Part shown: one piece after another, positions 3,423 to 25,540 of the stretch
How the letters are laid out: each line of letters starts with the position of its first letter
Numbering within the stretch: position 1 is the first letter of the stretch
Virus record (IMG/VR): IMGVR_UViG_3300025000_000053
Span: 62,001-126,000 of that record
Reading direction: 5' to 3' (one strand)
DNA length: 64,000 nucleotides
The notes under the pieces: generated by a model
Seen by the model: only the letters and a program-made list of their open reading frames with translations
Database searches by the model: none
What the model was told of the DNA's origin: nothing
Position numbers and translations under genes: made by a program

Positions 3423-3782
3423 TTAGTTTAAAGTACCTTTAATTTTTTCAATAAATATTTCAGCATCAACTAATAAGTCCTTTCTTAATTTAGCAAAAGA
3501 ATTATTACGACCTATATTATACATATTTAATAATTCAGCTATAATCACTTTTTCTGATCTGTTATCAATATTCAGATTTTTAACGGACTTTTCTAAATTA
3601 AGGAATAATTGGGAATATTCTGGATTATTTTTAAGTGTTACTTCAATATAATTTTTACTATTTAACTTCCCAATACAACCATCTAAATCATATTCATCAG
3701 GAATAAAGACATATAAGTATTCATCATTTTCATCAAATTCTTTATATAAAACCAATCCTTCCATCATTAACACTCCTTTCAT
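3423..3782 (-). CDS. Hypothetical protein
   Basis: 119-aa ORF directly downstream of the PurA-family gene; SD AAGGAG suggests a start a few codons in. Confidence 0.65.
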   Translation of the reverse strand: MKGVLMMEGLVLYKEFDENDEYLYVFIPDEYDLDGCIGKLNSKNYIEVTLKNNPEYSQLFLNLEKSVKNLNIDNRSEKVIIAELLNMYNIGRNNSFAKLRKDLLVDAEIFIEKIKGTLN

Positions 3783-3785
3783 ATA

Positions 3786-4799
3786 CTATAATTCAATTAA
3801 AGTTTTTTTACCTGTACCAATATAATTAATCTTACAATTTATTTGGATTTCAAATTTTTGTATATACCTTTTAATAATATCCGACACTACATCCGCCGAT
3901 TCATTACATGTATAATCAATATAATCTAAATGATTCATAACAACTATATTTGGTTTGTTTACCATTATTGCTCTCTTAACAAGATCTGCATCAAACTTAC
4001 CAACTCTTCTTTTTCTTAATGTAGCTGATGTATATTCAGTTAAATCAATGTCGGACCCATATATAGGTAGTCTTTCCCATGATATTTCATTTTCTAATGG
4101 ACCTGAATTACCTCCAACTCTTATTGGAAAAGCTCGAATAACCATAATAATATTTTCGACATCAAATGGACTCATTCCAGATTCCATTAAAAATCCTGCC
4201 GCAGTTGTATCTCTGCTAGTACAATATGGGTAATTTTTAGAATGAATTGGTGATAAGTCGAACCCCTGTGTACCCTCAATAATAACATGTTTACCTTCAT
4301 CTAAAAGGCCTCTTAAATATGTTTTTGTATCACAAATATATTTTTTTATACAAGCACAATCTTTAGCAAAAGTTATATTAGATGTTCTTTTCAACCTTTG
4401 GATAACGGCTTGTCCTGTCCCACTTTCAGTAGAACCAATACTAAGCTGTAATCTATCTTCTCTTTCACTTATTTTCATACATTCATCAATAATAACTGCA
4501 AATGGGTCTATTTTAAGATTATTGTTTTTAACCTGTGTTTTATTTATTTCTTGAAATAAAATACCCAAATCAATATACGAACCACTAGGCAGTATACTAA
4601 CAATATTTTCATCAATAGAAACAGTAGGTAAAATTCTTAATACAAACTCACCTTTATTTTCATCGACAACAATATGACCAGAGTTAGTCCCACCTACACG
4701 TACAACAGCAGAAGCTTTTAATTTCTGTGAGAAAAAATATGATACCTTTCCTTTACCCTCAGAACCATACTGCCCACCTACTATAATAGAGATTGGCAT
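3786..4799 (-). CDS. purA: Short adenylosuccinate-synthetase-family enzyme with PurZ/PurZ0-like signatures
   Basis: GGQYGSEGKGKV, GGTNSGH, EGTQG, YPYCTSRD, FPIRVGGNSG, RRVG, NHLD; Ser replaces the PurA catalytic Asp13. Confidence 0.9.
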   Translation of the reverse strand: MPISIIVGGQYGSEGKGKVSYFFSQKLKASAVVRVGGTNSGHIVVDENKGEFVLRILPTVSIDENIVSILPSGSYIDLGILFQEINKTQVKNNNLKIDPFAVIIDECMKISEREDRLQLSIGSTESGTGQAVIQRLKRTSNITFAKDCACIKKYICDTKTYLRGLLDEGKHVIIEGTQGFDLSPIHSKNYPYCTSRDTTAAGFLMESGMSPFDVENIIMVIRAFPIRVGGNSGPLENEISWERLPIYGSDIDLTEYTSATLRKRRVGKFDADLVKRAIMVNKPNIVVMNHLDYIDYTCNESADVVSDIIKRYIQKFEIQINCKINYIGTGKKTLIEL

Positions 4800-4877
4800 C
4801 TAGATACCTCCCTTTAATATATTAATACCTTTTAATACCATAAAAAATTTTATATGGTATTAAAATATAAAAACATA

Positions 4878-5597
4878 TTATTTATTTTTTTCTTCTTTAT
4901 CCCATGTAAAATAATCTTTATATAATAAATCTACTTCTTCTTCACTTAATACTTCCCATCTACTTCTTTGTAATTTAGAAACCATGTTTCTATAACACTT
5001 ATCATTTTCTTTACACATATCGTCAGCTGTATCAATATCATCAATAATTTTCCATAAATGATATAGTTTTTCCCGATTATTAAGTGCTAAACAAATATCT
5101 TTAGCTTGATCAGGACTTTTACATTCGATTATTAAGTTATCATGTTCATCATAAATGTTATTAACATAATTCTTACCAACAACATATTTACAAATTTTAT
5201 TATCTATAAACCTTCCTTTACCTTTAATCAAATCTTTAATACATGTATACCTATAATTTAATTCTTTTCTTATTTCATAACATCTATTATTAATTTTAGA
5301 AAATATATCTTCCCACTTCTTATCGTACTCATATTTACTATTTTCATAACTATTTATAACTAAGGCGAGTTCACGTATAAGAAGTTGTATTTGTTCATTA
5401 GCTGGTATAATGGTATAAATATTTATTAAAGGAATTTTAGATTCATCATTTTCTTCAGGAAAAGTTGTATGTGCATAACAATATTTAAAACTATTTAAGG
5501 GTTCATTAACAAATTGAACAACTACATTAATATCAGGATACAATTCTGTCATAACCTTATTTACAGTTTCAAACGGGTCATTAACAATTTTTATCAT
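4878..5597 (-). CDS. Hypothetical protein
   Basis: ORF track gives 4878..5645; SD AAGGAGG favours the ATG at 5597 (MIKIV...). Confidence 0.7.
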   Translation of the reverse strand: MIKIVNDPFETVNKVMTELYPDINVVVQFVNEPLNSFKYCYAHTTFPEENDESKIPLINIYTIIPANEQIQLLIRELALVINSYENSKYEYDKKWEDIFSKINNRCYEIRKELNYRYTCIKDLIKGKGRFIDNKICKYVVGKNYVNNIYDEHDNLIIECKSPDQAKDICLALNNREKLYHLWKIIDDIDTADDMCKENDKCYRNMVSKLQRSRWEVLSEEEVDLLYKDYFTWDKEEKNK

Positions 5598-6531
5598 TAC
5601 AATTTCCTCCTTTATTTTTGTTATATTCATGAAGATACTTAGCATTGTTTTTAGTAAGAGAAATTAATTGTCTAAAATTTTCTTTAGCTTTAAGATAATT
5701 TTCTCTTAATAATTGAAGTCTTTTCCATTTATCTTCATTCCATCCAAACTTTTTATTAAATTCTTTAAAAAATTCTAATTCACTACATTCATCATCAGTA
5801 TCTTTACAATCCCAACCACAAATAATCCCATAAATCCAGGCATCCTCTTTACATTCACTAAAATCTTTAGAACTAAATGATATTGTACGCTCTAAAGATT
5901 CAAAAGGGTTTTCATTAAGAGTTAAATCATCAATAGAACTAGCAAGAATATTAAGTTCCTCAGGATACATTTTAACATCTCTCCTTATTACAGATATTTT
6001 AATTTTTTCTTCTGTTATTATACCGTCTTCTAAAAGATTATGCAGTTTATCAAGATCGACATCTTCTTTCTGAACTTTAACTTGAATCCAATTTGGTTCA
6101 TGTTTTCTATAGTCAAGAAAGGTTTTAGGCTCTTTACCTAAAACTTTTTTAAACATTTCTACAACCCTTTCACCAGCTGCCTTACATTTAACAAATCCAG
6201 CAAGATCATAGCCAACCCCTCTTGATGAAAACCATTCTCCACCATTTTCAGGAGGGTTATCAGGTCTTACATAAGGGTGTGAGGGTATACCTTTTCTTGG
6301 ATGTTCTTGTAAATTTGGATATATTGGTGGAGAACCGAAACCTATACAAGATTCTTTCACTCCGTCTGATAAAACTACAAAGAATCCATCACATTCACCA
6401 CATTTTACAGGATGTGAACCACCACCTGAAATAACAGTACCATAACAATACTCACATCCACAATGTACACAACCATATTGTTTAAAATTAGATGCACTTA
6501 CAGCAATAATTTCATTACTCATTATATCCAT
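5581..6531 (-). CDS. Hypothetical protein with N-terminal Cys-rich Zn-binding motifs; possible two-gene fusion
   Basis: CVHCGC...CGEC; internal SD AAGGAG plus in-frame ATG (MYPEEL). Confidence 0.7.
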   Translation of the reverse strand: MDIMSNEIIAVSASNFKQYGCVHCGCEYCYGTVISGGGSHPVKCGECDGFFVVLSDGVKESCIGFGSPPIYPNLQEHPRKGIPSHPYVRPDNPPENGGEWFSSRGVGYDLAGFVKCKAAGERVVEMFKKVLGKEPKTFLDYRKHEPNWIQVKVQKEDVDLDKLHNLLEDGIITEEKIKISVIRRDVKMYPEELNILASSIDDLTLNENPFESLERTISFSSKDFSECKEDAWIYGIICGWDCKDTDDECSELEFFKEFNKKFGWNEDKWKRLQLLRENYLKAKENFRQLISLTKNNAKYLHEYNKNKGGNCNDKNC

Positions 6532-13888: not shown

Positions 13889-14254
13889 TTATTCCTCTTC
13901 ATCCTCAGTGGTATTATCATCTTTAACCATGAGTTTAAATTCTTGACCAGGGATTAAGAACGGTGTGAAGTTACCTACTTTTTCACCTTCATCATTTTCC
14001 CTATAAGAAATACCCATGTCAAACAGCTGCATTAAATTGATAGAAATATCTTCCCCAGCAGTTTTCTTTTCATTTAGATAAGCAATTGATTGCTGTAAGA
14101 AACGATATGCAATCGTTGCAATTGCTGGTGCATGTGTAACATTAATGTTGTGTTCACTGATAAGAGCTTTATTTGCTCTTTCACAAATTTTAGTAATTTC
14201 CTTCTGATTCTCTCTGATTTCCAAAAATACTGCATCATCCTTATTACTTGCCAT
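13889..14254 (-). CDS. Small conserved-looking protein, possibly HU/IHF-like
   Basis: C-terminal NFTPFLIPGQEFKLMVK echoes the HU P-x-F-x-P-G-x2-L-K motif (weak). Confidence 0.6.
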   Translation of the reverse strand: MASNKDDAVFLEIRENQKEITKICERANKALISEHNINVTHAPAIATIAYRFLQQSIAYLNEKKTAGEDISINLMQLFDMGISYRENDEGEKVGNFTPFLIPGQEFKLMVKDDNTTEDEEE

Positions 14255-14305
14255 AATAAATAACCTCCCCTTATTTTTTAATACTAATATTTTGTTATTA
14301 GCATA

Positions 14306-14851
14306 TTAGTTTTTAATTTTATTAAATTTAAAAATGATATCATGTAATTTCATAGTCATAAATTCATCTTCTTTTGAGTACAGTTTTTCACTAAATTTGT
14401 ATTCAAGAGCTTGACTTAAAAAAGCATGAACTATAGTGAAAATCGCATCAGATGAAGTGATATTGATATCAAATTTCATTAAAAGAATATCATTAGCCAT
14501 ATCACAAAGTTCATTATTCTTTTCATCAGTGTTTAATAAAATAGCAACTTCTGAATTAGTTTCCCGTTCAATATAATCATCATGAACAGGTTTTATTAAA
14601 TAAATAATGTCTTGAACTTTACTATTCATATAGCAAAAAAGATTAATATCATCTAACTGTATTCTACTTTCTTTATTCTTTTCTCTATCAATTAAACCAT
14701 GTAAAAAAGCATACACAATTGTAGCAACCGATGGATATAATAAAATATCTATATTATTTAATTCATATAATCTTTTAGATGTTCTCTTACAAATTTCTCT
14801 TTCAGAATCATTTATTTTTATTAACAAACAGTCCAGATCAATACTACTCAA
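14306..14851 (-). CDS. Hypothetical protein with two repeats homologous to the N-terminus of 13889..14254
   Basis: EICKRTSK..ATIVYAFL and ELCDMAND..FTIVHAFL versus KICERANK..ATIAYRFL. Confidence 0.65.
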   Translation of the reverse strand: MSSIDLDCLLIKINDSEREICKRTSKRLYELNNIDILLYPSVATIVYAFLHGLIDREKNKESRIQLDDINLFCYMNSKVQDIIYLIKPVHDDYIERETNSEVAILLNTDEKNNELCDMANDILLMKFDINITSSDAIFTIVHAFLSQALEYKFSEKLYSKEDEFMTMKLHDIIFKFNKIKN

Positions 14852-14873
14852 CTGTCACAAAACCCCCTGTGTA

Positions 14874-17036
14874 TCAATTTTTTCTTTCATATTTAAATAT
14901 TTTGTAAGCATCCTCTAATGTTACAATAGGTATATAATCTTTTTTAGCTTTATCAACTTTAGATGATTGAACACCTAAATCTTTTACAACTACCATATCA
15001 ATCCCTTTATTATAATTATCAACAACTAGTATGTTTTTATCGTCAAGGAATTTTTCAAATTCCCTATCACGGATTTTAGTAAAACATACTTTACCAATAT
15101 ATTCACGCAAATCTTCTTTTATAACTAATTCGGAACATAAGAAATTTATAAGTTCAATATTACTATTTACTCCTTTAATTATCTTTTCAGCTGTTTTATT
15201 TTTTATTCCTCCTATCATAGTTAATTTTTTTACATCATTATTTAAACATATATCTTTTAATTCATTCAAATAATATATATTTAAAATACGTTTAAATATT
15301 TTTCTCCCTATATCGGGTATCCCCAAAGAACCTAATAATTCATAGTTATAAACAGTTTTACGACTTTTAATACTATCAACTATTTTATTAAATATTTTTT
15401 CACCAAATCCTTTAAATAATAGGATTGTTTGTTTATGATCTTTAATAAAGTATAAATCTTTAATACTTTTTACAACACCTAATTCATATAATAATGTGAT
15501 AATACCACTAGAAATATTAGGTATAGATATCTTTTCAGCATAATTTATAATTTTACCTATTTTTCTAGAATCACAATTTTCATTAACACATTTTAATATA
15601 GGATCTTTAACTAATGGTTGTTTACAATAACGACATTCTGTTGGAGTTTTAAATAGTTTACCTTTTTCATTTCTTTTACAAGTTTCATCTATAATTAAAT
15701 ATGGAATTACATCATACTTAATTATAACTTCATCACCTTTTCTTAATTTACGTTCTTCAAATGTATCTATAGAACCTAAAGAAATATTAGTTATTGTATT
15801 ACCATTTATTTTAACTGGTTCAATTATAGCAACAGGTGCTATTGAACCTAAAATACCAGTTGACATTATAACATCTTTAATTATAGTTCTTTTTTGTTCA
15901 GGTGGTAACTTATATGCAACTTCAAATTTATTAATATTATTTTCTCTCCCAAGTTGTTTAATGGTATTTTCATTTGCAAGAGTTATAACAACACCATCAA
16001 TCGGGATACCATCTTTTCTAACTGAACGAACCATAGTTTCTATAACTCGTTCAATATAATCAAAGTCAGTAATATCTTCAATTAAACTAAATCCTATTCT
16101 ACTATTTAAAATTGATGTAGCAAATTCATCACTTATTCTCTGATATTGAAGAGGTATTATTGTTAGATATTTTAAAAGATTTTTATTTATATCTTTACTT
16201 GTATTAAGAATTGATGAAACTGCACTTCTTGAACTTTTTAATATTCTTTCATTCTTACAAAATTCTTCAAAATCAAAATCCTTCATAATAATTTCTGTTT
16301 TTACACCATAGTCCTCATTAAATATCATAAACTCATATTTATTATCGTCACACATCATAACCTCTTTATAATATTTAATATCTACAAGACCAAAATTAAA
16401 TTTGATTCCATTAAATAAATCAGTTATATCTATTGCTTCATTATTATCAACATCACCTCTAGTTAAAACTTTGTCAGCTGTTTTTAAATTAGATTTAAAT
16501 TCAAAAATACCAGATATACCATCATATTTTGGTGTCATTCTAGCAACTTTCTCAACATTATTTAACTTTCTCCCTAATTTATTTTCAATACCTTTTATCC
16601 AATCTTCTAAAGATTTTCTATTATCCTTTCCCTTATCTTTCTTTCTAATAAAATGAATTTTATCTAAAGTACCTCTTAAAGCTGGATAACTGTGATAACC
16701 TATTTTTCTATCTTTAACTTTATTAATAGGAGCACCAACAATTTCTTTCATTTGTAAGTCTTTGTTCAGTTCATATAATCTATCATAATCTTCATCACTA
16801 ACAGGAGAATCAACTTCACTATTATTATAAATATCTTGCAGTATCTTTATTATTAATTCAATAATAATTAAATCATCTGAATTATAATTTTCAGTCCCAC
16901 TTAATAAAATATTTATAATTCTATTAATTCCAATGGTATTTAATTTTTCTACAATCACTTCATAATCATCAAAAATATCTAATCTTTCAACAAAAATAAC
17001 TGATAATGAATCAATAATATTTTTTTTGTCTAACAT
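14874..17036 (-). CDS. ligA: NAD-dependent DNA ligase
   Basis: TPKYDG adenylation motif, TRGD, DGVVI, AYK, C4 zinc finger, HhH and BRCT-like C-terminus. Confidence 0.95.
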   Translation of the reverse strand: MLDKKNIIDSLSVIFVERLDIFDDYEVIVEKLNTIGINRIINILLSGTENYNSDDLIIIELIIKILQDIYNNSEVDSPVSDEDYDRLYELNKDLQMKEIVGAPINKVKDRKIGYHSYPALRGTLDKIHFIRKKDKGKDNRKSLEDWIKGIENKLGRKLNNVEKVARMTPKYDGISGIFEFKSNLKTADKVLTRGDVDNNEAIDITDLFNGIKFNFGLVDIKYYKEVMMCDDNKYEFMIFNEDYGVKTEIIMKDFDFEEFCKNERILKSSRSAVSSILNTSKDINKNLLKYLTIIPLQYQRISDEFATSILNSRIGFSLIEDITDFDYIERVIETMVRSVRKDGIPIDGVVITLANENTIKQLGRENNINKFEVAYKLPPEQKRTIIKDVIMSTGILGSIAPVAIIEPVKINGNTITNISLGSIDTFEERKLRKGDEVIIKYDVIPYLIIDETCKRNEKGKLFKTPTECRYCKQPLVKDPILKCVNENCDSRKIGKIINYAEKISIPNISSGIITLLYELGVVKSIKDLYFIKDHKQTILLFKGFGEKIFNKIVDSIKSRKTVYNYELLGSLGIPDIGRKIFKRILNIYYLNELKDICLNNDVKKLTMIGGIKNKTAEKIIKGVNSNIELINFLCSELVIKEDLREYIGKVCFTKIRDREFEKFLDDKNILVVDNYNKGIDMVVVKDLGVQSSKVDKAKKDYIPIVTLEDAYKIFKYERKN

Positions 17037-24613: not shown

Positions 24614-25540
24614 TTAGTACTTTAGTTTTAAAATCTTACCATTATTCAACATAATAAAGAATAGTTTAAAGTTATGCTCTAATTGAGATAGAGCTTTTGA
24701 ATAAAATTTCTTAGCCCTGTTGTTAAGATATTCGGAATCAATAAATAATGTTACCGCACTAAATCTTTCTCCTTTTATTTTTTCAATAATAGAAGGTAAT
24801 TCCATGTTATTGAATTCAACAATGTTGAAAGCAGTTTCATTACTATATTTCGAATGTAATTGATGCAGCTGATTTTTTTCTGACCTAAGTGTGAAAATAG
24901 TGTGAGTTGGTCTATTGGGCCTAAAATTAGATACAATAAACGGTGTATATTTATCCCCATTTTTAGACTCAACTATTTTCTTAGAAAATAGTAATTCTCT
25001 AACTTTATTAGTTACTTCGATTTCCTCACCATTAACTTCTGTTATACCTCCAACATTATTTTCAACAATACTAAAGGTATAAATCATATCGGATTTAGTG
25101 TGTTTATCATAAATCCTAATTTCCAATGGTTTGTCCTTATTATTTAAGGCCGCAATAAAAGTTAATTCTCCATCAAGAGAATAATTTTCCAATAAACATA
25201 TAAAATCTTTACTAATATTGACAAGCATACGCTTACCAATATTTAAAGTAACTAACACAATGTCAGTATTGTTATCAACTCTTTTATTCTCAATTATAAA
25301 CGGGTTAAAATCTTTTTTCCCGTAAATAAGACTTGTTAATGCATTATTTAAAATAACAGGTTCCTTCATTTTAATAAGTTTTGATAAAACATCATTTGAA
25401 GGAATAAGATGTTTCATAGCACGAATAAAACAATGCATATCAAATACAGGTGAATCCTTTCTCTTAAAAAACGCACCAGTTTTGTCATTCAATTCATTAT
25501 TGCTCCAGGATCTTGTACTTTCATTAAAAAGTATTATCAT
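24614..25540 (-). CDS. Hypothetical protein, paralogue of 25579..26499
   Basis: Shared motifs (F/L)NE..K/RxW, KD(F/L)NPFII, RPxRPT. Confidence 0.75.
   Translation of the reverse strand: MIILFNESTRSWSNNELNDKTGAFFKRKDSPVFDMHCFIRAMKHLIPSNDVLSKLIKMKEPVILNNALTSLIYGKKDFNPFIIENKRVDNNTDIVLVTLNIGKRMLVNISKDFICLLENYSLDGELTFIAALNNKDKPLEIRIYDKHTKSDMIYTFSIVENNVGGITEVNGEEIEVTNKVRELLFSKKIVESKNGDKYTPFIVSNFRPNRPTHTIFTLRSEKNQLHQLHSKYSNETAFNIVEFNNMELPSIIEKIKGERFSAVTLFIDSEYLNNRAKKFYSKALSQLEHNFKLFFIMLNNGKILKLKY

What the first reader, a model, noticed from the sequence alone, without database searches (positions are those of the whole stretch)
3786..4799. PurZ/PurZ0-like enzyme in an extremely AT-rich jumbo phage: possible 2-aminoadenine (Z) DNA pathway
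Seen: a short 337-aa PurA-family protein with GGQYGSEGKG (Ser where PurA has catalytic Asp13), FPIRV (PurA has Y-x-T-R-V), YPYCTSRD and NHLD. Established: the Asp-to-Ser change distinguishes PurZ, which acts on dGMP in the dZTP pathway, from PurA. PurZ0 of Gordonia phage Archimedes is a short GTP-using form that keeps the Asp of the xxLD motif, as this protein does. Inference: this phage may make dZ or another modified purine; Z:T pairs would stabilise a genome of about 23% GC. Caveats: no datZ/mazZ partner is visible in this window, the PurA-type Arg in TSATLRKRR is retained, and bacterial short PurA-like proteins with the same motif have unclear function.
Basis: partly seen in the sequence, partly recalled or inferred. 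Interest (0 to 1): 0.75.

Follow-up and report, generated by a model that had tools for sequence, protein, structure and literature searches.

The report
Lone PurZ0-like enzyme in jumbo phage
A 250-kb, very AT-rich groundwater phage carries a single intact gene for an enzyme with the active-site signature of those that make the alternative DNA base 2-aminoadenine (Z), but the gene was captured from a widespread, undescribed bacterial operon and none of the helper genes known from Z-DNA phages is present.

Summary
It is an intact PurA-superfamily enzyme with Ser in place of the catalytic Asp13. It has the Thr and Trp that mark PurZ-type enzymes, the same two-residue loop insertion as PurZ0, and a retained guanine-type donor site.

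It is not a member of PurZ or PurZ0. It scores below the curated PurZ and PurA cut-offs, and an AU test rejects grouping it with PurZ0 (p = 1.8e-7). It nests (99% support) in a large cellular clade whose genes sit in a conserved operon: PolX-PHP-adenylate-kinase-like, PurA-like, dCTP-deaminase/dUTPase-fold (DutZ-related), deoxynucleoside kinase. That operon often lies next to restriction-modification and integrase genes. Its nearest relatives (71-75% identity) are such operon copies.

The complete 249,853-bp phage genome has no DatZ, MazZ, DUF550, DutZ, DmtZ, DUF5664, PolA/DpoZ or PurB. It replicates with a divergent family-B polymerase related to Bacillus phages PBS1/AR9.

Best reading: an active, GTP-dependent, dGMP-using PurZ0-like synthetase working with host enzymes. 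Whether the DNA holds Z is untested, and full replacement is unlikely without a dATP-removing enzyme.

The parts
3786..4799 (-). Gene for a 337-aa short PurA-superfamily enzyme of the non-Asp (Ser13) type. By active-site signature it is a PurZ0-like, GTP-type synthetase. Key residues: Ser13, Lys16, Asn39/His42 (NSGH), Gln178 (EGTQG), Val228 followed by the GNSG insertion (229-233), Trp241, Thr257, Thr260, Arg262, Arg264/265, Asp292 (NHLD).
   Evidence: family and PDB matches; residue table; phylogeny and AU test.
4807..4814 (-). Shine-Dalgarno sequence AAGGGAGG, 7 nt upstream of the ATG at 4799. The gene has its own strong translation start.
   Evidence: Read directly from the sequence.
4835..4860 (-). 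AT-rich inverted repeat (ATACCATA, 10-nt loop, TATGGTAT) in the 78-nt gap between the stop of the upstream gene (4878) and this gene. It could be a weak terminator or regulatory hairpin. Function not shown.
   Evidence: Read directly from the sequence. The consensus terminator scan did not call it.
3423..3782 (-). Downstream 119-aa ORF with no recognisable domain. It starts 3-20 nt after the stop of the PurA-like gene with its own AAAGGAG, so it is probably co-transcribed. There is no evidence that it is a functional partner.
   Evidence: No homologue sits next to other solo phage copies.

Best explanation
The gene encodes a catalytically intact, dimeric PurA-fold enzyme that most likely condenses aspartate with a guanine deoxynucleotide (dGMP), using GTP as phosphate donor. 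The product would be N6-succino-2-amino-2'-deoxyadenylate, the same chemistry as phage PurZ0. The phage captured it, without its neighbours, from a mobile four-gene operon of a Bacillota-type host. Host adenylosuccinate lyase and host kinases would turn the product into dZTP, and the phage's divergent family-B polymerase would then insert Z opposite T. No enzyme that removes dATP is recognisable, so any replacement of A by Z is more likely partial than complete. Shown: gene integrity, residue signature, phylogenetic origin, and absence of known partners. Inferred: substrate, donor, product and any presence of Z in the DNA.
For: All 34 invariant positions of the family alignment, whose first row is the query, are by construction present in the query, and a strong SD precedes the gene. 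Ser replaces Asp13, Thr replaces Gly298 and Trp replaces Asp284 (E. coli numbering). At the first two positions every PurZ/PurZ0 examined has Ser and Thr, and all 23 true PurAs have Asp and Gly. At the third position the reference alignment shows Trp in both PurZ0s and two of three PurZs (Phe in S-2L), and Asp or Gln in the two PurAs. [quoted passage not shown] The two-residue GNSG insertion after the Val equivalent to E. coli V273 is identical to that of PurZ0 and absent from PurA. In PurZ an insertion at this place pushes the Val towards C2' and disfavours ribose (PMC8342488). The donor-site Asp (NHLD, equivalent to E. coli D333) is kept, as in PurA and PurZ0, and is lost in ATP-using PurZ. 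The cellular relatives are fused or adjacent to deoxynucleotide enzymes: a dCTP-deaminase/dUTPase-fold protein homologous to DutZ (hhalign 96%), a deoxynucleoside kinase, and an adenylate-kinase-like domain on a PolX. This points to a deoxynucleotide substrate. Cells that carry the operon always keep a separate canonical PurA. Phages captured the gene alone several times independently, so it is useful to a phage by itself. The phage makes its own dNTPs (NrdD, ThyX, dCMP deaminase, thymidylate kinase).
Against: No biochemical datum exists for any member of this clade. The protein scores below the curated PurZ cut-off. Every described PurZ0 genome has dutZ and every Z-phage has some dATP/dGTP hydrolase (PMC12884076), and none is detectable here even with unfiltered profile searches. 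The Arg equivalent to E. coli R303, which in PurA contacts the 2'-OH and aspartate, is retained in the query, although the position varies within the clade. A genome that is 75% A+T would need a very large dGMP-to-dZMP flux. No read-level data exist to look for modification.
Confidence: 0.4

Rival explanations
1. Counter-defence. The cellular PolX / PurA-like / DCD-like / dNK operon is an anti-phage or DNA-marking system. The phage copy interferes with it, for example by forming mixed dimers with the host enzyme, by consuming its substrate, or by making the same modified nucleotide so that phage DNA carries the host's mark.
For: The operon sits in mobile or defence-island-like contexts. It lies next to a type I R-M system, a recombinase and an HNH gene in L008, between integrases and IS91 in L224, and near IS66 or DDE transposases in L001 and L005. 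Among 126 immediately flanking genes, the recurring Pfam families are mostly R-M and integrase families. The query is 67-75% identical to such operon copies. PurA enzymes are obligate dimers with an Arg from the partner subunit in the active site (PMC8342488). Several unrelated phages carry the gene alone.
Against: No defence phenotype has been shown for the operon, and PADLOC has no model for its PurA-like or DCD-like proteins. The flank census has no matched control. The phage copy keeps every catalytic residue, which a pure decoy would not need. The host and its gene content are unknown.
Confidence: 0.2
2. Ordinary purine supply. The enzyme is a working adenylosuccinate (or deoxyadenylosuccinate) synthetase acting on IMP or dIMP, boosting (d)ATP for an A+T-rich genome. 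This would parallel the phage's dCMP deaminase / ThyX / thymidylate kinase route to dTTP.
For: PurA-superfamily fold with the best PDB match to Pyrococcus PurA (1.3e-43). GTP-type donor site and R303-equivalent Arg are retained. The phage invests in dTTP synthesis. Four close family members have Asp at position 13.
Against: Ser replaces the catalytic base Asp13, which is 99% conserved in PurA (PMC12884076). Gly298 is replaced by Thr and Asp284 by Trp. The protein lies outside the Asp-PurA clade (98% support) and below all PurA equivalog cut-offs. Cells with this family always have a separate true PurA.
Confidence: 0.12
3. Full Z-genome. The phage replaces all A by Z as S-2L and phiVC8 do, using dATP- and dGTP-hydrolysing enzymes that are not homologous to any known one. 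Candidates are the lone NUDIX hydrolase or one of the many ORFs of unknown function.
For: One NUDIX protein is encoded (genome 24855-25232). About 277 ORFs are mostly unannotated. Nucleotide-pool enzymes of Z-phages have arisen several times independently (PMC12884076). The phage is related to PBS1/AR9-type phages, which (from my own knowledge) replace a whole base.
Against: The NUDIX gene is 40 kb away and unlinked. No conserved neighbour accompanies the solo gene in any phage. There is no HD, MazG, dUTPase, DUF550, DUF5664 or NDT-type match. There is no PolA-type Z-selective polymerase.
Confidence: 0.1
4. Passenger gene. A recently acquired host gene without a role in the phage.
For: GC (30.8%) is 1.7 SD above the mean of the phage's genes. 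The closest relatives are bacterial operon copies.
Against: Intact ORF with all catalytic residues and a strong SD. GC3 (16.3%) is within 1 SD of the genome mean, so the gene is largely ameliorated. It is identical in independent assemblies. Solo capture recurs in unrelated phages.
Confidence: 0.08

Closest known systems
PurZ0 (GTP-dependent 2-aminoadenylosuccinate synthetase of actinophages, e.g. Gordonia phage Archimedes, PDB 7VF6)
   Same: Short PurA fold. Ser at the Asp13 position, Thr262 and Trp252 equivalents, identical P-I-R-V-x-G-N-S-G loop with the two-residue insertion, and a retained donor-site Asp. PDB match E = 8e-43.
   Different: Only about 34% identity. A separate clade, with the AU test rejecting union. 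The P-loop is GSEGKGK (PurA-like) rather than GSEAKG(R/H). Arg, not Lys, at the R303 position, and His, not Met, at the K331 position. There is no dutZ, dmtZ, DUF5664, PolA or PurB in the genome, whereas all 98 PurZ0 genomes have dutZ.
PurZ (ATP-dependent, Vibrio phage phiVC8 6FM1, cyanophage S-2L 7ODX; NCBIfam NF038379)
   Same: Ser14, Thr262, Trp252, and an aromatic residue at position 12. Same non-Asp superclade.
   Different: The query lacks the ATP-site residues (F295, N297), the P144 and Y244 insertions and the longer loop after the conserved Val. It scores 219 bits against a cut-off of 300. No datZ/mazZ synteny.
Archaeal-type short PurA (Pyrococcus horikoshii 2D7U/5K7X; NCBIfam NF003295)
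   Same: Same length and architecture. Best PDB sequence match (1.3e-43, full length). GTP-type donor site, and E14-G15-K16-G17-K18 retained.
   Different: Asp13 is replaced by Ser, Gly298 by Thr, and there is an added GNSG insertion. It scores 260 bits against a cut-off of 368, where true archaeal PurAs score 510-586. It is a separate clade.
Uncharacterised cellular operon: PolX-PHP-(DUF429)-adenylate-kinase-like / PurA-like / DCD-like / dNK in bacteria, and RNase_H_2-DUF429 / PurA-like (Gly or Ser) / DCD / dNK in archaea
   Same: The query nests inside the bacterial clade (99% support), at 71-75% identity to operon copies of the same length.
   Different: In the phage the gene stands alone. 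None of the partner genes is in the genome. The operon's function is unknown and I found no description of it in the held literature.

Membership tests
Canonical adenylosuccinate synthetase PurA | Catalytic base Asp13 (99% conserved) | tested here: not met
   Ser13 in GGQYGSEGKG. All 23 true PurAs in the set have Asp.
Canonical adenylosuccinate synthetase PurA | Score above the curated equivalog cut-off (TIGR00184 395 bits; archaeal NF003295 368 bits) | tested here: not met
   171 and 260 bits. True archaeal PurAs score 510-586 and bacterial ones 487-556.
Canonical adenylosuccinate synthetase PurA | Placement in the Asp-PurA clade | tested here: not met
   Separated from it by a branch with 98% SH-aLRT support.
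Canonical adenylosuccinate synthetase PurA | IMP + Asp + GTP gives adenylosuccinate | not testable with these tools
   Needs an enzyme assay.
PurZ (NF038379) | Score above the curated cut-off of 300 bits | tested here: not met
   219 bits, against 397 for phiVC8 PurZ and 325 for Archimedes PurZ0.
PurZ (NF038379) | Substrate-side residues Ser14, Thr262, Trp252 (phiVC8 numbering) | tested here: met
   Ser13, Thr257 and Trp241 of the query align to them.
PurZ (NF038379) | ATP-type donor site (F295, N/Q297; loss of the guanine-binding Asp) | tested here: not met
   The query has His and Asp (NHLD).
PurZ (NF038379) | Synteny with datZ and mazZ/DUF550 (Z-cluster) | tested here: not met
   No HD, MazG, DatZ, MazZ or DUF550 match in the complete genome.
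PurZ0 | Ser at position 13, GNSG loop insertion, retained donor-site Asp | tested here: met
PurZ0 | Membership of the monophyletic PurZ0 clade | tested here: not met
   The PurZ0 and Z-cluster viral sequences form their own clade (99%). The query lies in another (99%). AU test: delta lnL 72, p = 1.8e-7.
PurZ0 | Co-occurrence with dutZ (all 98 described genomes), usually dmtZ, and a PolA-type DpoZ-1 | tested here: not met
   Single-sequence and profile searches find none. The polymerase is a divergent family-B enzyme.
PurZ0 | dGMP + Asp + GTP gives dSMP | not testable with these tools
   Needs an enzyme assay. The docking job was not run by the tool.
Cellular operon-type PurA-like clade (undescribed) | Placement in the clade | tested here: met
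   81-row clade at 99%. The query sits in a 6-10-row subclade with operon copies at 99-100% support.
Cellular operon-type PurA-like clade (undescribed) | Adjacent DCD-like gene (76 of 80 genomic loci), PolX-PHP-kinase and dNK | tested here: not met
   Solo in the phage.
Z-DNA (2-aminoadenine) genome | dZ replaces dA in virion DNA | not testable with these tools
   Only assembled contigs of the source runs are kept.

The most novel reading that the evidence does not exclude
The phage gene points to a widespread, undescribed cellular system. This is an operon in bacterial and archaeal defence-island-like regions that combines a PurZ0-like synthetase, a DutZ-related dNTP enzyme, a deoxynucleoside kinase, an adenylate-kinase-like domain and a PolX (or an RNase H-like exonuclease in archaea). 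That gene set parallels the phage Z-cluster and could make dZTP and insert it into DNA. Phage Z-genomes would then descend from such cellular systems. This PBS1/AR9-related jumbo phage would be an early, minimal stage: one captured gene, host completion of the pathway, and a family-B polymerase writing partly Z-substituted DNA.
Probability: 0.2. Interest if true: 0.9.

Novelty: new variant of a known kind. Interest (0 to 1): 0.6.

Why it matters
Z-DNA phages are so far defined by PurZ or PurZ0 together with nucleotide-pool enzymes, and usually a PolA-type polymerase. Suppose this lone enzyme makes dSMP, and its product reaches the DNA of a 250-kb, 24.5% GC phage replicated by a family-B polymerase. 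That would show that the pathway can run with a single phage gene. It would extend Z chemistry to a new phage lineage related to the uracil-DNA phages, and it would provide a natural case of partial substitution. Independently of the phage, the analysis shows that PurZ-like enzymes are common in cells. In cells the gene sits in a conserved operon with a DutZ-like enzyme, kinases and a repair polymerase. This makes the origin of PurZ testable, and also the question of whether cells themselves make Z-nucleotides for defence, DNA marking or repair.

Tried and rejected
1. Partner genes in the window and the genome. Pfam HD, MazG, dNK, Lyase_1, PHP, dUTPase and class I/II RNR searches, single-sequence phmmer, and unfiltered profile HMMs built from 2-90 sequences per family were all negative. 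The one exception was a weak kinase hit that proved to be thymidylate kinase.

2. Docking of GTP to the query dimer. The tool did not fold this kind of complex, so it gives no evidence.

3. Promoter and terminator scan. It is uninformative in DNA this AT-rich: 68 promoter-like sites against 74 expected.

4. Sequencing runs. Only Logan contigs of four DNA runs from two groundwater samples exist, with no raw reads and no RNA, so neither modification signals nor expression could be examined.

5. tRNA scan for host clues. There are none in the whole genome.

6. PADLOC. It has no model for the PurA-like or DCD-like operon proteins. The dNK matches VakA only as a generic kinase.

7. Literature searches for the operon found nothing.

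8. A conserved hidden partner next to the solo phage copies. None exists; the only recurrent 'family' is a spurious antisense ORF inside the gene.

9. The first attempt to obtain Asp-type archaeal PurA, by searching with the Gly-type P0150, returned only more non-Asp paralogues. This was solved through the genome search.

10. The Pfam inventory of the genome shows only the top 25 of 46 and 50 matched families, so minor families may be unlisted.
Full report
**1. The observation.** The window holds one ORF at 3786-4799 on the minus strand: 337 aa with an ATG start. A strong Shine-Dalgarno AAGGGAGG lies 7 nt upstream.
- GGQYGSEGKG (8-17, Ser13)
- YPYCTSRD (190-197)
- FPIRV (224-228)
- TSATLRKRR (257-265)
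- NHLD (289-292)

The ORF matches Pfam Adenylsucc_synt at E = 1.5e-50. It aligns over its full length with the solved structures of Pyrococcus horikoshii PurA (2D7U/5K7X, 1.3e-43). It also matches Gordonia phage Archimedes PurZ0 (7VF6, 8e-43), phiVC8 PurZ (6FM1, 3e-34) and S-2L PurZ (7ODX, 6e-23).

**2. The genome.** The window is bases 62001-126000 of a single 249,853-bp IMG/VR contig that CheckV rates 100% complete. Its GC content is 24.5%. It has about 277 ORFs of at least 60 aa and 90% coding density.

It is a genuine tailed phage:
- tail tube and head-tail joining proteins, endolysin domains (Amidase_3, SH3_3, Glucosaminidase), gyrase A/B, an NAD-dependent ligase and two chaperonins
- a divergent DnaB and a divergent family-B DNA polymerase (PF20286) spread over three ORFs

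The polymerase is closest to those of Bacillus jumbo phages Internexus, PBS1 and AR9, at 32% identity over 100% of its length (E = 1e-88). Staphylococcus S6-like phages and Yersinia phiR1-37 follow. From my own knowledge, these are the phages whose DNA holds uracil instead of thymine.

This phage, however, encodes ThyX, dCMP deaminase and a thymidylate kinase. It also encodes an anaerobic ribonucleotide reductase (NrdD with an ATP-cone) and a radical-SAM activase. It therefore probably makes dTTP and infects an anaerobe.

The phage comes from groundwater metagenomes. The gene is identical in a second IMG/VR contig (L098) and is present in contigs from two samples.

**3. Absence of Z-pathway partners.** I took reference genes from Archimedes, Wayne, phiVC8, S-2L, Acinetobacter phage Bhz9 and Ochrobactrum phage OH. 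With them I searched all six-frame ORFs of the genome for DatZ, MazZ, DUF550/DUF5664, both DutZ types, DmtZ-DutZ, gp51-type proteins, PolA/DpoZ and PurB.
- Single-sequence searches found nothing.
- Profile HMMs with all heuristic filters off found nothing.
- Curated Pfam searches for HD, MazG, dUTPase, Lyase_1 and PHP were negative, while the controls were positive.

The only weak hit (a dNK-like match, genome 165325-166107) is a thymidylate kinase. One NUDIX hydrolase lies 40 kb away. The ten neighbouring genes have no informative domain.

This matters because every one of the 98 described PurZ0 genomes has dutZ. PurZ genomes have DatZ plus MazZ or DUF550 (PMC12884076).

**4. What the protein's relatives are.** In phage GenBank records the best matches are actinophage PurZ0 proteins at only 34-38% identity. 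In the 5.8-billion-protein collection there is a much closer and very large family at 50-75% identity. Of its 120 best members, 118 have Ser at the Asp13 position. In the exhaustive representative search, 106 of the top 150 cluster representatives have Ser, 5 have Gly and 2 have Asp.

*Context in bacteria.* The gene lies in a conserved operon:
- a ~920-aa protein, then the PurA-like gene
- a ~360-aa protein
- a deoxynucleoside kinase, and sometimes an adenylosuccinate lyase

Of 80 loci fetched from named species genomes, 76 have the ~360-aa gene adjacent. About 65 have the large upstream gene and about 32 have dNK.

*Context in archaea.* Archaea have the same core with a Gly/Ser-type enzyme. 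There the upstream gene is an RNase_H_2/DUF429 protein instead of the PolX protein.

*Fusions.* Gene fusions (PurA-like::DCD, kinase::PurA-like) confirm functional coupling.

*The partner proteins.*
- The large protein is a full-length PolX. Residues 4-511 align with Thermus PolX 3AU2 at E = 3e-70. It also carries a PHP domain, a DUF429-like middle domain and an adenylate-kinase-like C-terminus.
- The ~360-aa protein has a dCTP-deaminase/dUTPase fold. Its profile matches PDB entries at 5e-17. The AF2 model has pLDDT 88, and Foldseek gives a target TM-score of 0.83 to the M. tuberculosis bifunctional enzyme. A long helical hairpin follows the fold.
- That protein's profile is homologous to the DutZ-type enzymes of PurZ0 phages (hhalign 96% and 94%).

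*A paralogue, not the housekeeping enzyme.* Cells carrying the operon also keep a canonical PurA: 5 of 5 bacteria and 1 archaeon tested.

*Flanking genes.* Among 126 genes immediately flanking the operons, 121 Pfam families matched. The recurring ones are mostly restriction-modification and integrase families:
- N6_Mtase 5, Eco57I 4, MmeI_Mtase 3, D12 methylase 2
- ResIII 2, HsdM_N 2, PLDc_2 2, Phage_integrase 3

RlmJ-type methyltransferase (4), PDZ domains (2) and AAA_18 (2) also recur. This fits a defence-island or mobile location, but I had no matched control. PADLOC has no model for the operon, and I found no description of it in the held literature.

**5. Phylogeny.** The trees included the query, close metagenomic relatives, 43 operon copies, 21 solo viral copies, Z-cluster viral copies and reference PurZ0 and PurZ. 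They also included archaeal Gly/Ser paralogues, bona fide archaeal PurA and long bacterial PurA as outgroup. The model was LG+C20 PMSF.
- True archaeal PurA is one clade, and all non-Asp proteins form another (98% SH-aLRT).
- Within the non-Asp clade, PurZ (100%) and PurZ0 with the Z-cluster viral sequences (99%) are separate clades.
- The query lies in an 81-row clade (99%) made of the bacterial operon genes and several solo viral genes.

In the careful tree the query sits in 6-, 7- and 10-row sets with operon copies, at 99/98, 100/95 and 100/100 support. The AU test rejects uniting it with PurZ0 (delta lnL 72, p = 1.8e-7).

Its nearest relatives are:
- P0004 (71%, also 337 aa), in a full operon flanked by integrases and IS91
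- P0002 (75%), with the DCD-position gene and dNK downstream
- P0007 (67%), in the core next to a type I R-M system
- P0003 (75%), alone in a mobile-element or prophage-like region

The subclade is rich in Bacillota (Lachnospiraceae, Clostridia, Sedimentibacter, Oscillospiraceae). This agrees with the phage's Gram-positive-type relatives and its strong SD.

Solo viral copies fall at five or more separate places in the clade. They share no conserved neighbour, so phages have repeatedly taken this one gene alone.

**6. Active site.** In a structure-aware alignment the query keeps Lys16, Asn38/His41 (NSGH) and Gln224 (EGTQG). It also keeps the phosphate-binding Ser/Thr, the dimer-interface Arg and Arg305.

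It differs from all 23 true PurAs at the positions that distinguish PurZ:

| Position (E. coli / phiVC8 numbering) | True PurA | Query |
|---|---|---|
| 13 / 14 | Asp | Ser |
| 298 / 262 | Gly | Thr |
| 284 / 252 | Asp or Gln (two PurAs in the reference alignment) | Trp |

[quoted passage not shown] W252 ranks first among residues separating dZ-contig PurZ from PurA (bioRxiv 10.1101/2025.10.22.683976).

After the Val equivalent to E. coli V273 the query has the same two-residue insertion (G-N-S-G) as PurZ0 and the archaeal Gly/Ser clade. PurA lacks it and PurZ has a longer one. In PurZ an insertion at this site moves the Val towards C2' and the R303 equivalent away from the sugar, which explains the deoxy preference (PMC8342488).

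The donor site keeps the guanine-binding Asp (NHLD), as PurA and PurZ0 do. PurZ has Asn or Gln there, and Phe at the K331 position. The R303-equivalent residue is Arg in the query but varies within the clade (R/K/L/M/C/T). This argues against the strict constraint seen in PurA.

Against the curated models, the query scores 219 bits on PurZ (cut-off 300) and 260 on archaeal PurA (cut-off 368). Its bacterial relatives score 200-255 and 240-278. PurZ0 of Archimedes scores 325 and PurZ of phiVC8 scores 397 on the PurZ model.

**7. Interpretation.** The residue signature and the deoxynucleotide enzymes that accompany the family in cells support one inference. The protein most likely condenses aspartate with dGMP using GTP, as PurZ0 does. 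That PurZ0 uses GTP rests on my own knowledge of the paper cited as reference 12 in PMC12884076. PMC12884076 itself states the ATP/GTP preferences in the reverse order, which conflicts with PMC8342488, where PurZ uses ATP.

Known Z-phages rely on host lyase and kinases for the later steps, so a lone synthetase could feed dZTP into replication. Most polymerases do not discriminate Z from A.

Without a dATP-removing enzyme, complete replacement is unlikely. Partial substitution, or a role directed at the host's own operon, are the realistic alternatives. Nothing here shows that the DNA contains Z.

**8. Verdict.** The gene is a new variant of a known kind: PurZ0-like by active site, but from a distinct, uncharacterised cellular clade, and standing alone in a PBS1/AR9-related jumbo phage. 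The more surprising by-product is the cellular operon itself, whose gene set parallels the phage Z-cluster.

Noticed in passing
Loci L001-L006, L008, L018-L097, L224, L225 (bacteria); L178, L179 (archaea): A conserved, apparently undescribed operon: PolX-PHP-DUF429-adenylate-kinase-like protein, Ser-type PurA-like enzyme, a dCTP-deaminase/dUTPase-fold protein with a C-terminal helical hairpin (DutZ-related), and a deoxynucleoside kinase, sometimes with an adenylosuccinate lyase. In archaea an RNase_H_2/DUF429 protein replaces the PolX. At least 579 species carry it. It is often flanked by R-M genes, integrases or transposases. Carriers keep a separate canonical PurA.
   Followed up: partly
Genome 14068-15936 (-), also ~51.3 kb and ~243.7 kb (L209-L211, L212:14068-15933:-): The divergent family-B DNA polymerase (PF20286), spread over three ORFs, is closest to Bacillus phages PBS1/AR9/Internexus, then Staphylococcus S6-like phages and Yersinia phiR1-37. 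From my own knowledge these are the uracil-DNA jumbo phages. This phage nevertheless encodes ThyX, dCMP deaminase and thymidylate kinase.
   Followed up: partly
Second half of the genome (beyond window position ~57,900; ORF not localised): A complete polyphosphate kinase PPK1 (all four Pfam domains, E down to 1.5e-67), a SET-domain protein, a second chaperonin, RusA, RNase H and DUF5661/DUF5662 proteins are encoded by the phage.
   Followed up: no
Genome 24855-25232 (+), L223: A single NUDIX hydrolase (45 bits). It is the only recognisable candidate for a nucleotide pyrophosphatase in the genome, and it is unlinked to the PurA-like gene.
   Followed up: no
P0123, P0246, P0237, P0202; P0122/P0272 with L016/L017: Natural fusions of the Ser-type enzyme with a DCD domain (C-terminal) or with one or two P-loop kinase domains (N-terminal). 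A 451-aa form with a C-terminal extension stands alone in phage-like contigs whose longest records reach 246-249 kb, so these may be another jumbo phage lineage.
   Followed up: partly
window 5581-6531 (-) and L016:17436-18056: A 316-aa protein with an N-terminal Cys-rich (CxxC) region, two genes upstream of the PurA-like gene. It has a homologue about 6 kb from the PurA-like gene in the other jumbo-like contig. No Pfam match.
   Followed up: no
L207 (CAKLQF020000006.1) and L208 (OR844989.1): Two records filed as phages (Acinetobacter phage MD-2021a contig; Staphylococcus phage SA 1306 Kay, 282 kb). L207 carries canonical long purA among housekeeping genes (alaS, hisZ, crp). L208 is unannotated and marked UNVERIFIED_ORG. 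Both look like host-chromosome contigs.
   Followed up: no
PMC12884076, section 24: The paper states that PurZ0 and PurZ prefer ATP and GTP 'respectively'. This is the reverse of what PMC8342488 (PurZ uses ATP) and the donor-site residues seen here imply, and is probably a slip in word order.
   Followed up: no
Whole genome (window and L212-L222): No tRNA gene in a 250-kb phage genome. There are three NUMOD4 homing-endonuclease-type proteins and two Mtd_N (major tropism determinant) domains, the latter suggesting a diversity-generating retroelement target.
   Followed up: no
L106 (IMGVR_UViG_3300021592_000001, 188 kb): A viral contig whose PurA-like gene groups with the archaeal Gly/Ser clade and has a PolX-PHP-like neighbour. 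It may be an archaeal virus, or a misbinned cellular fragment carrying part of the operon.
   Followed up: no
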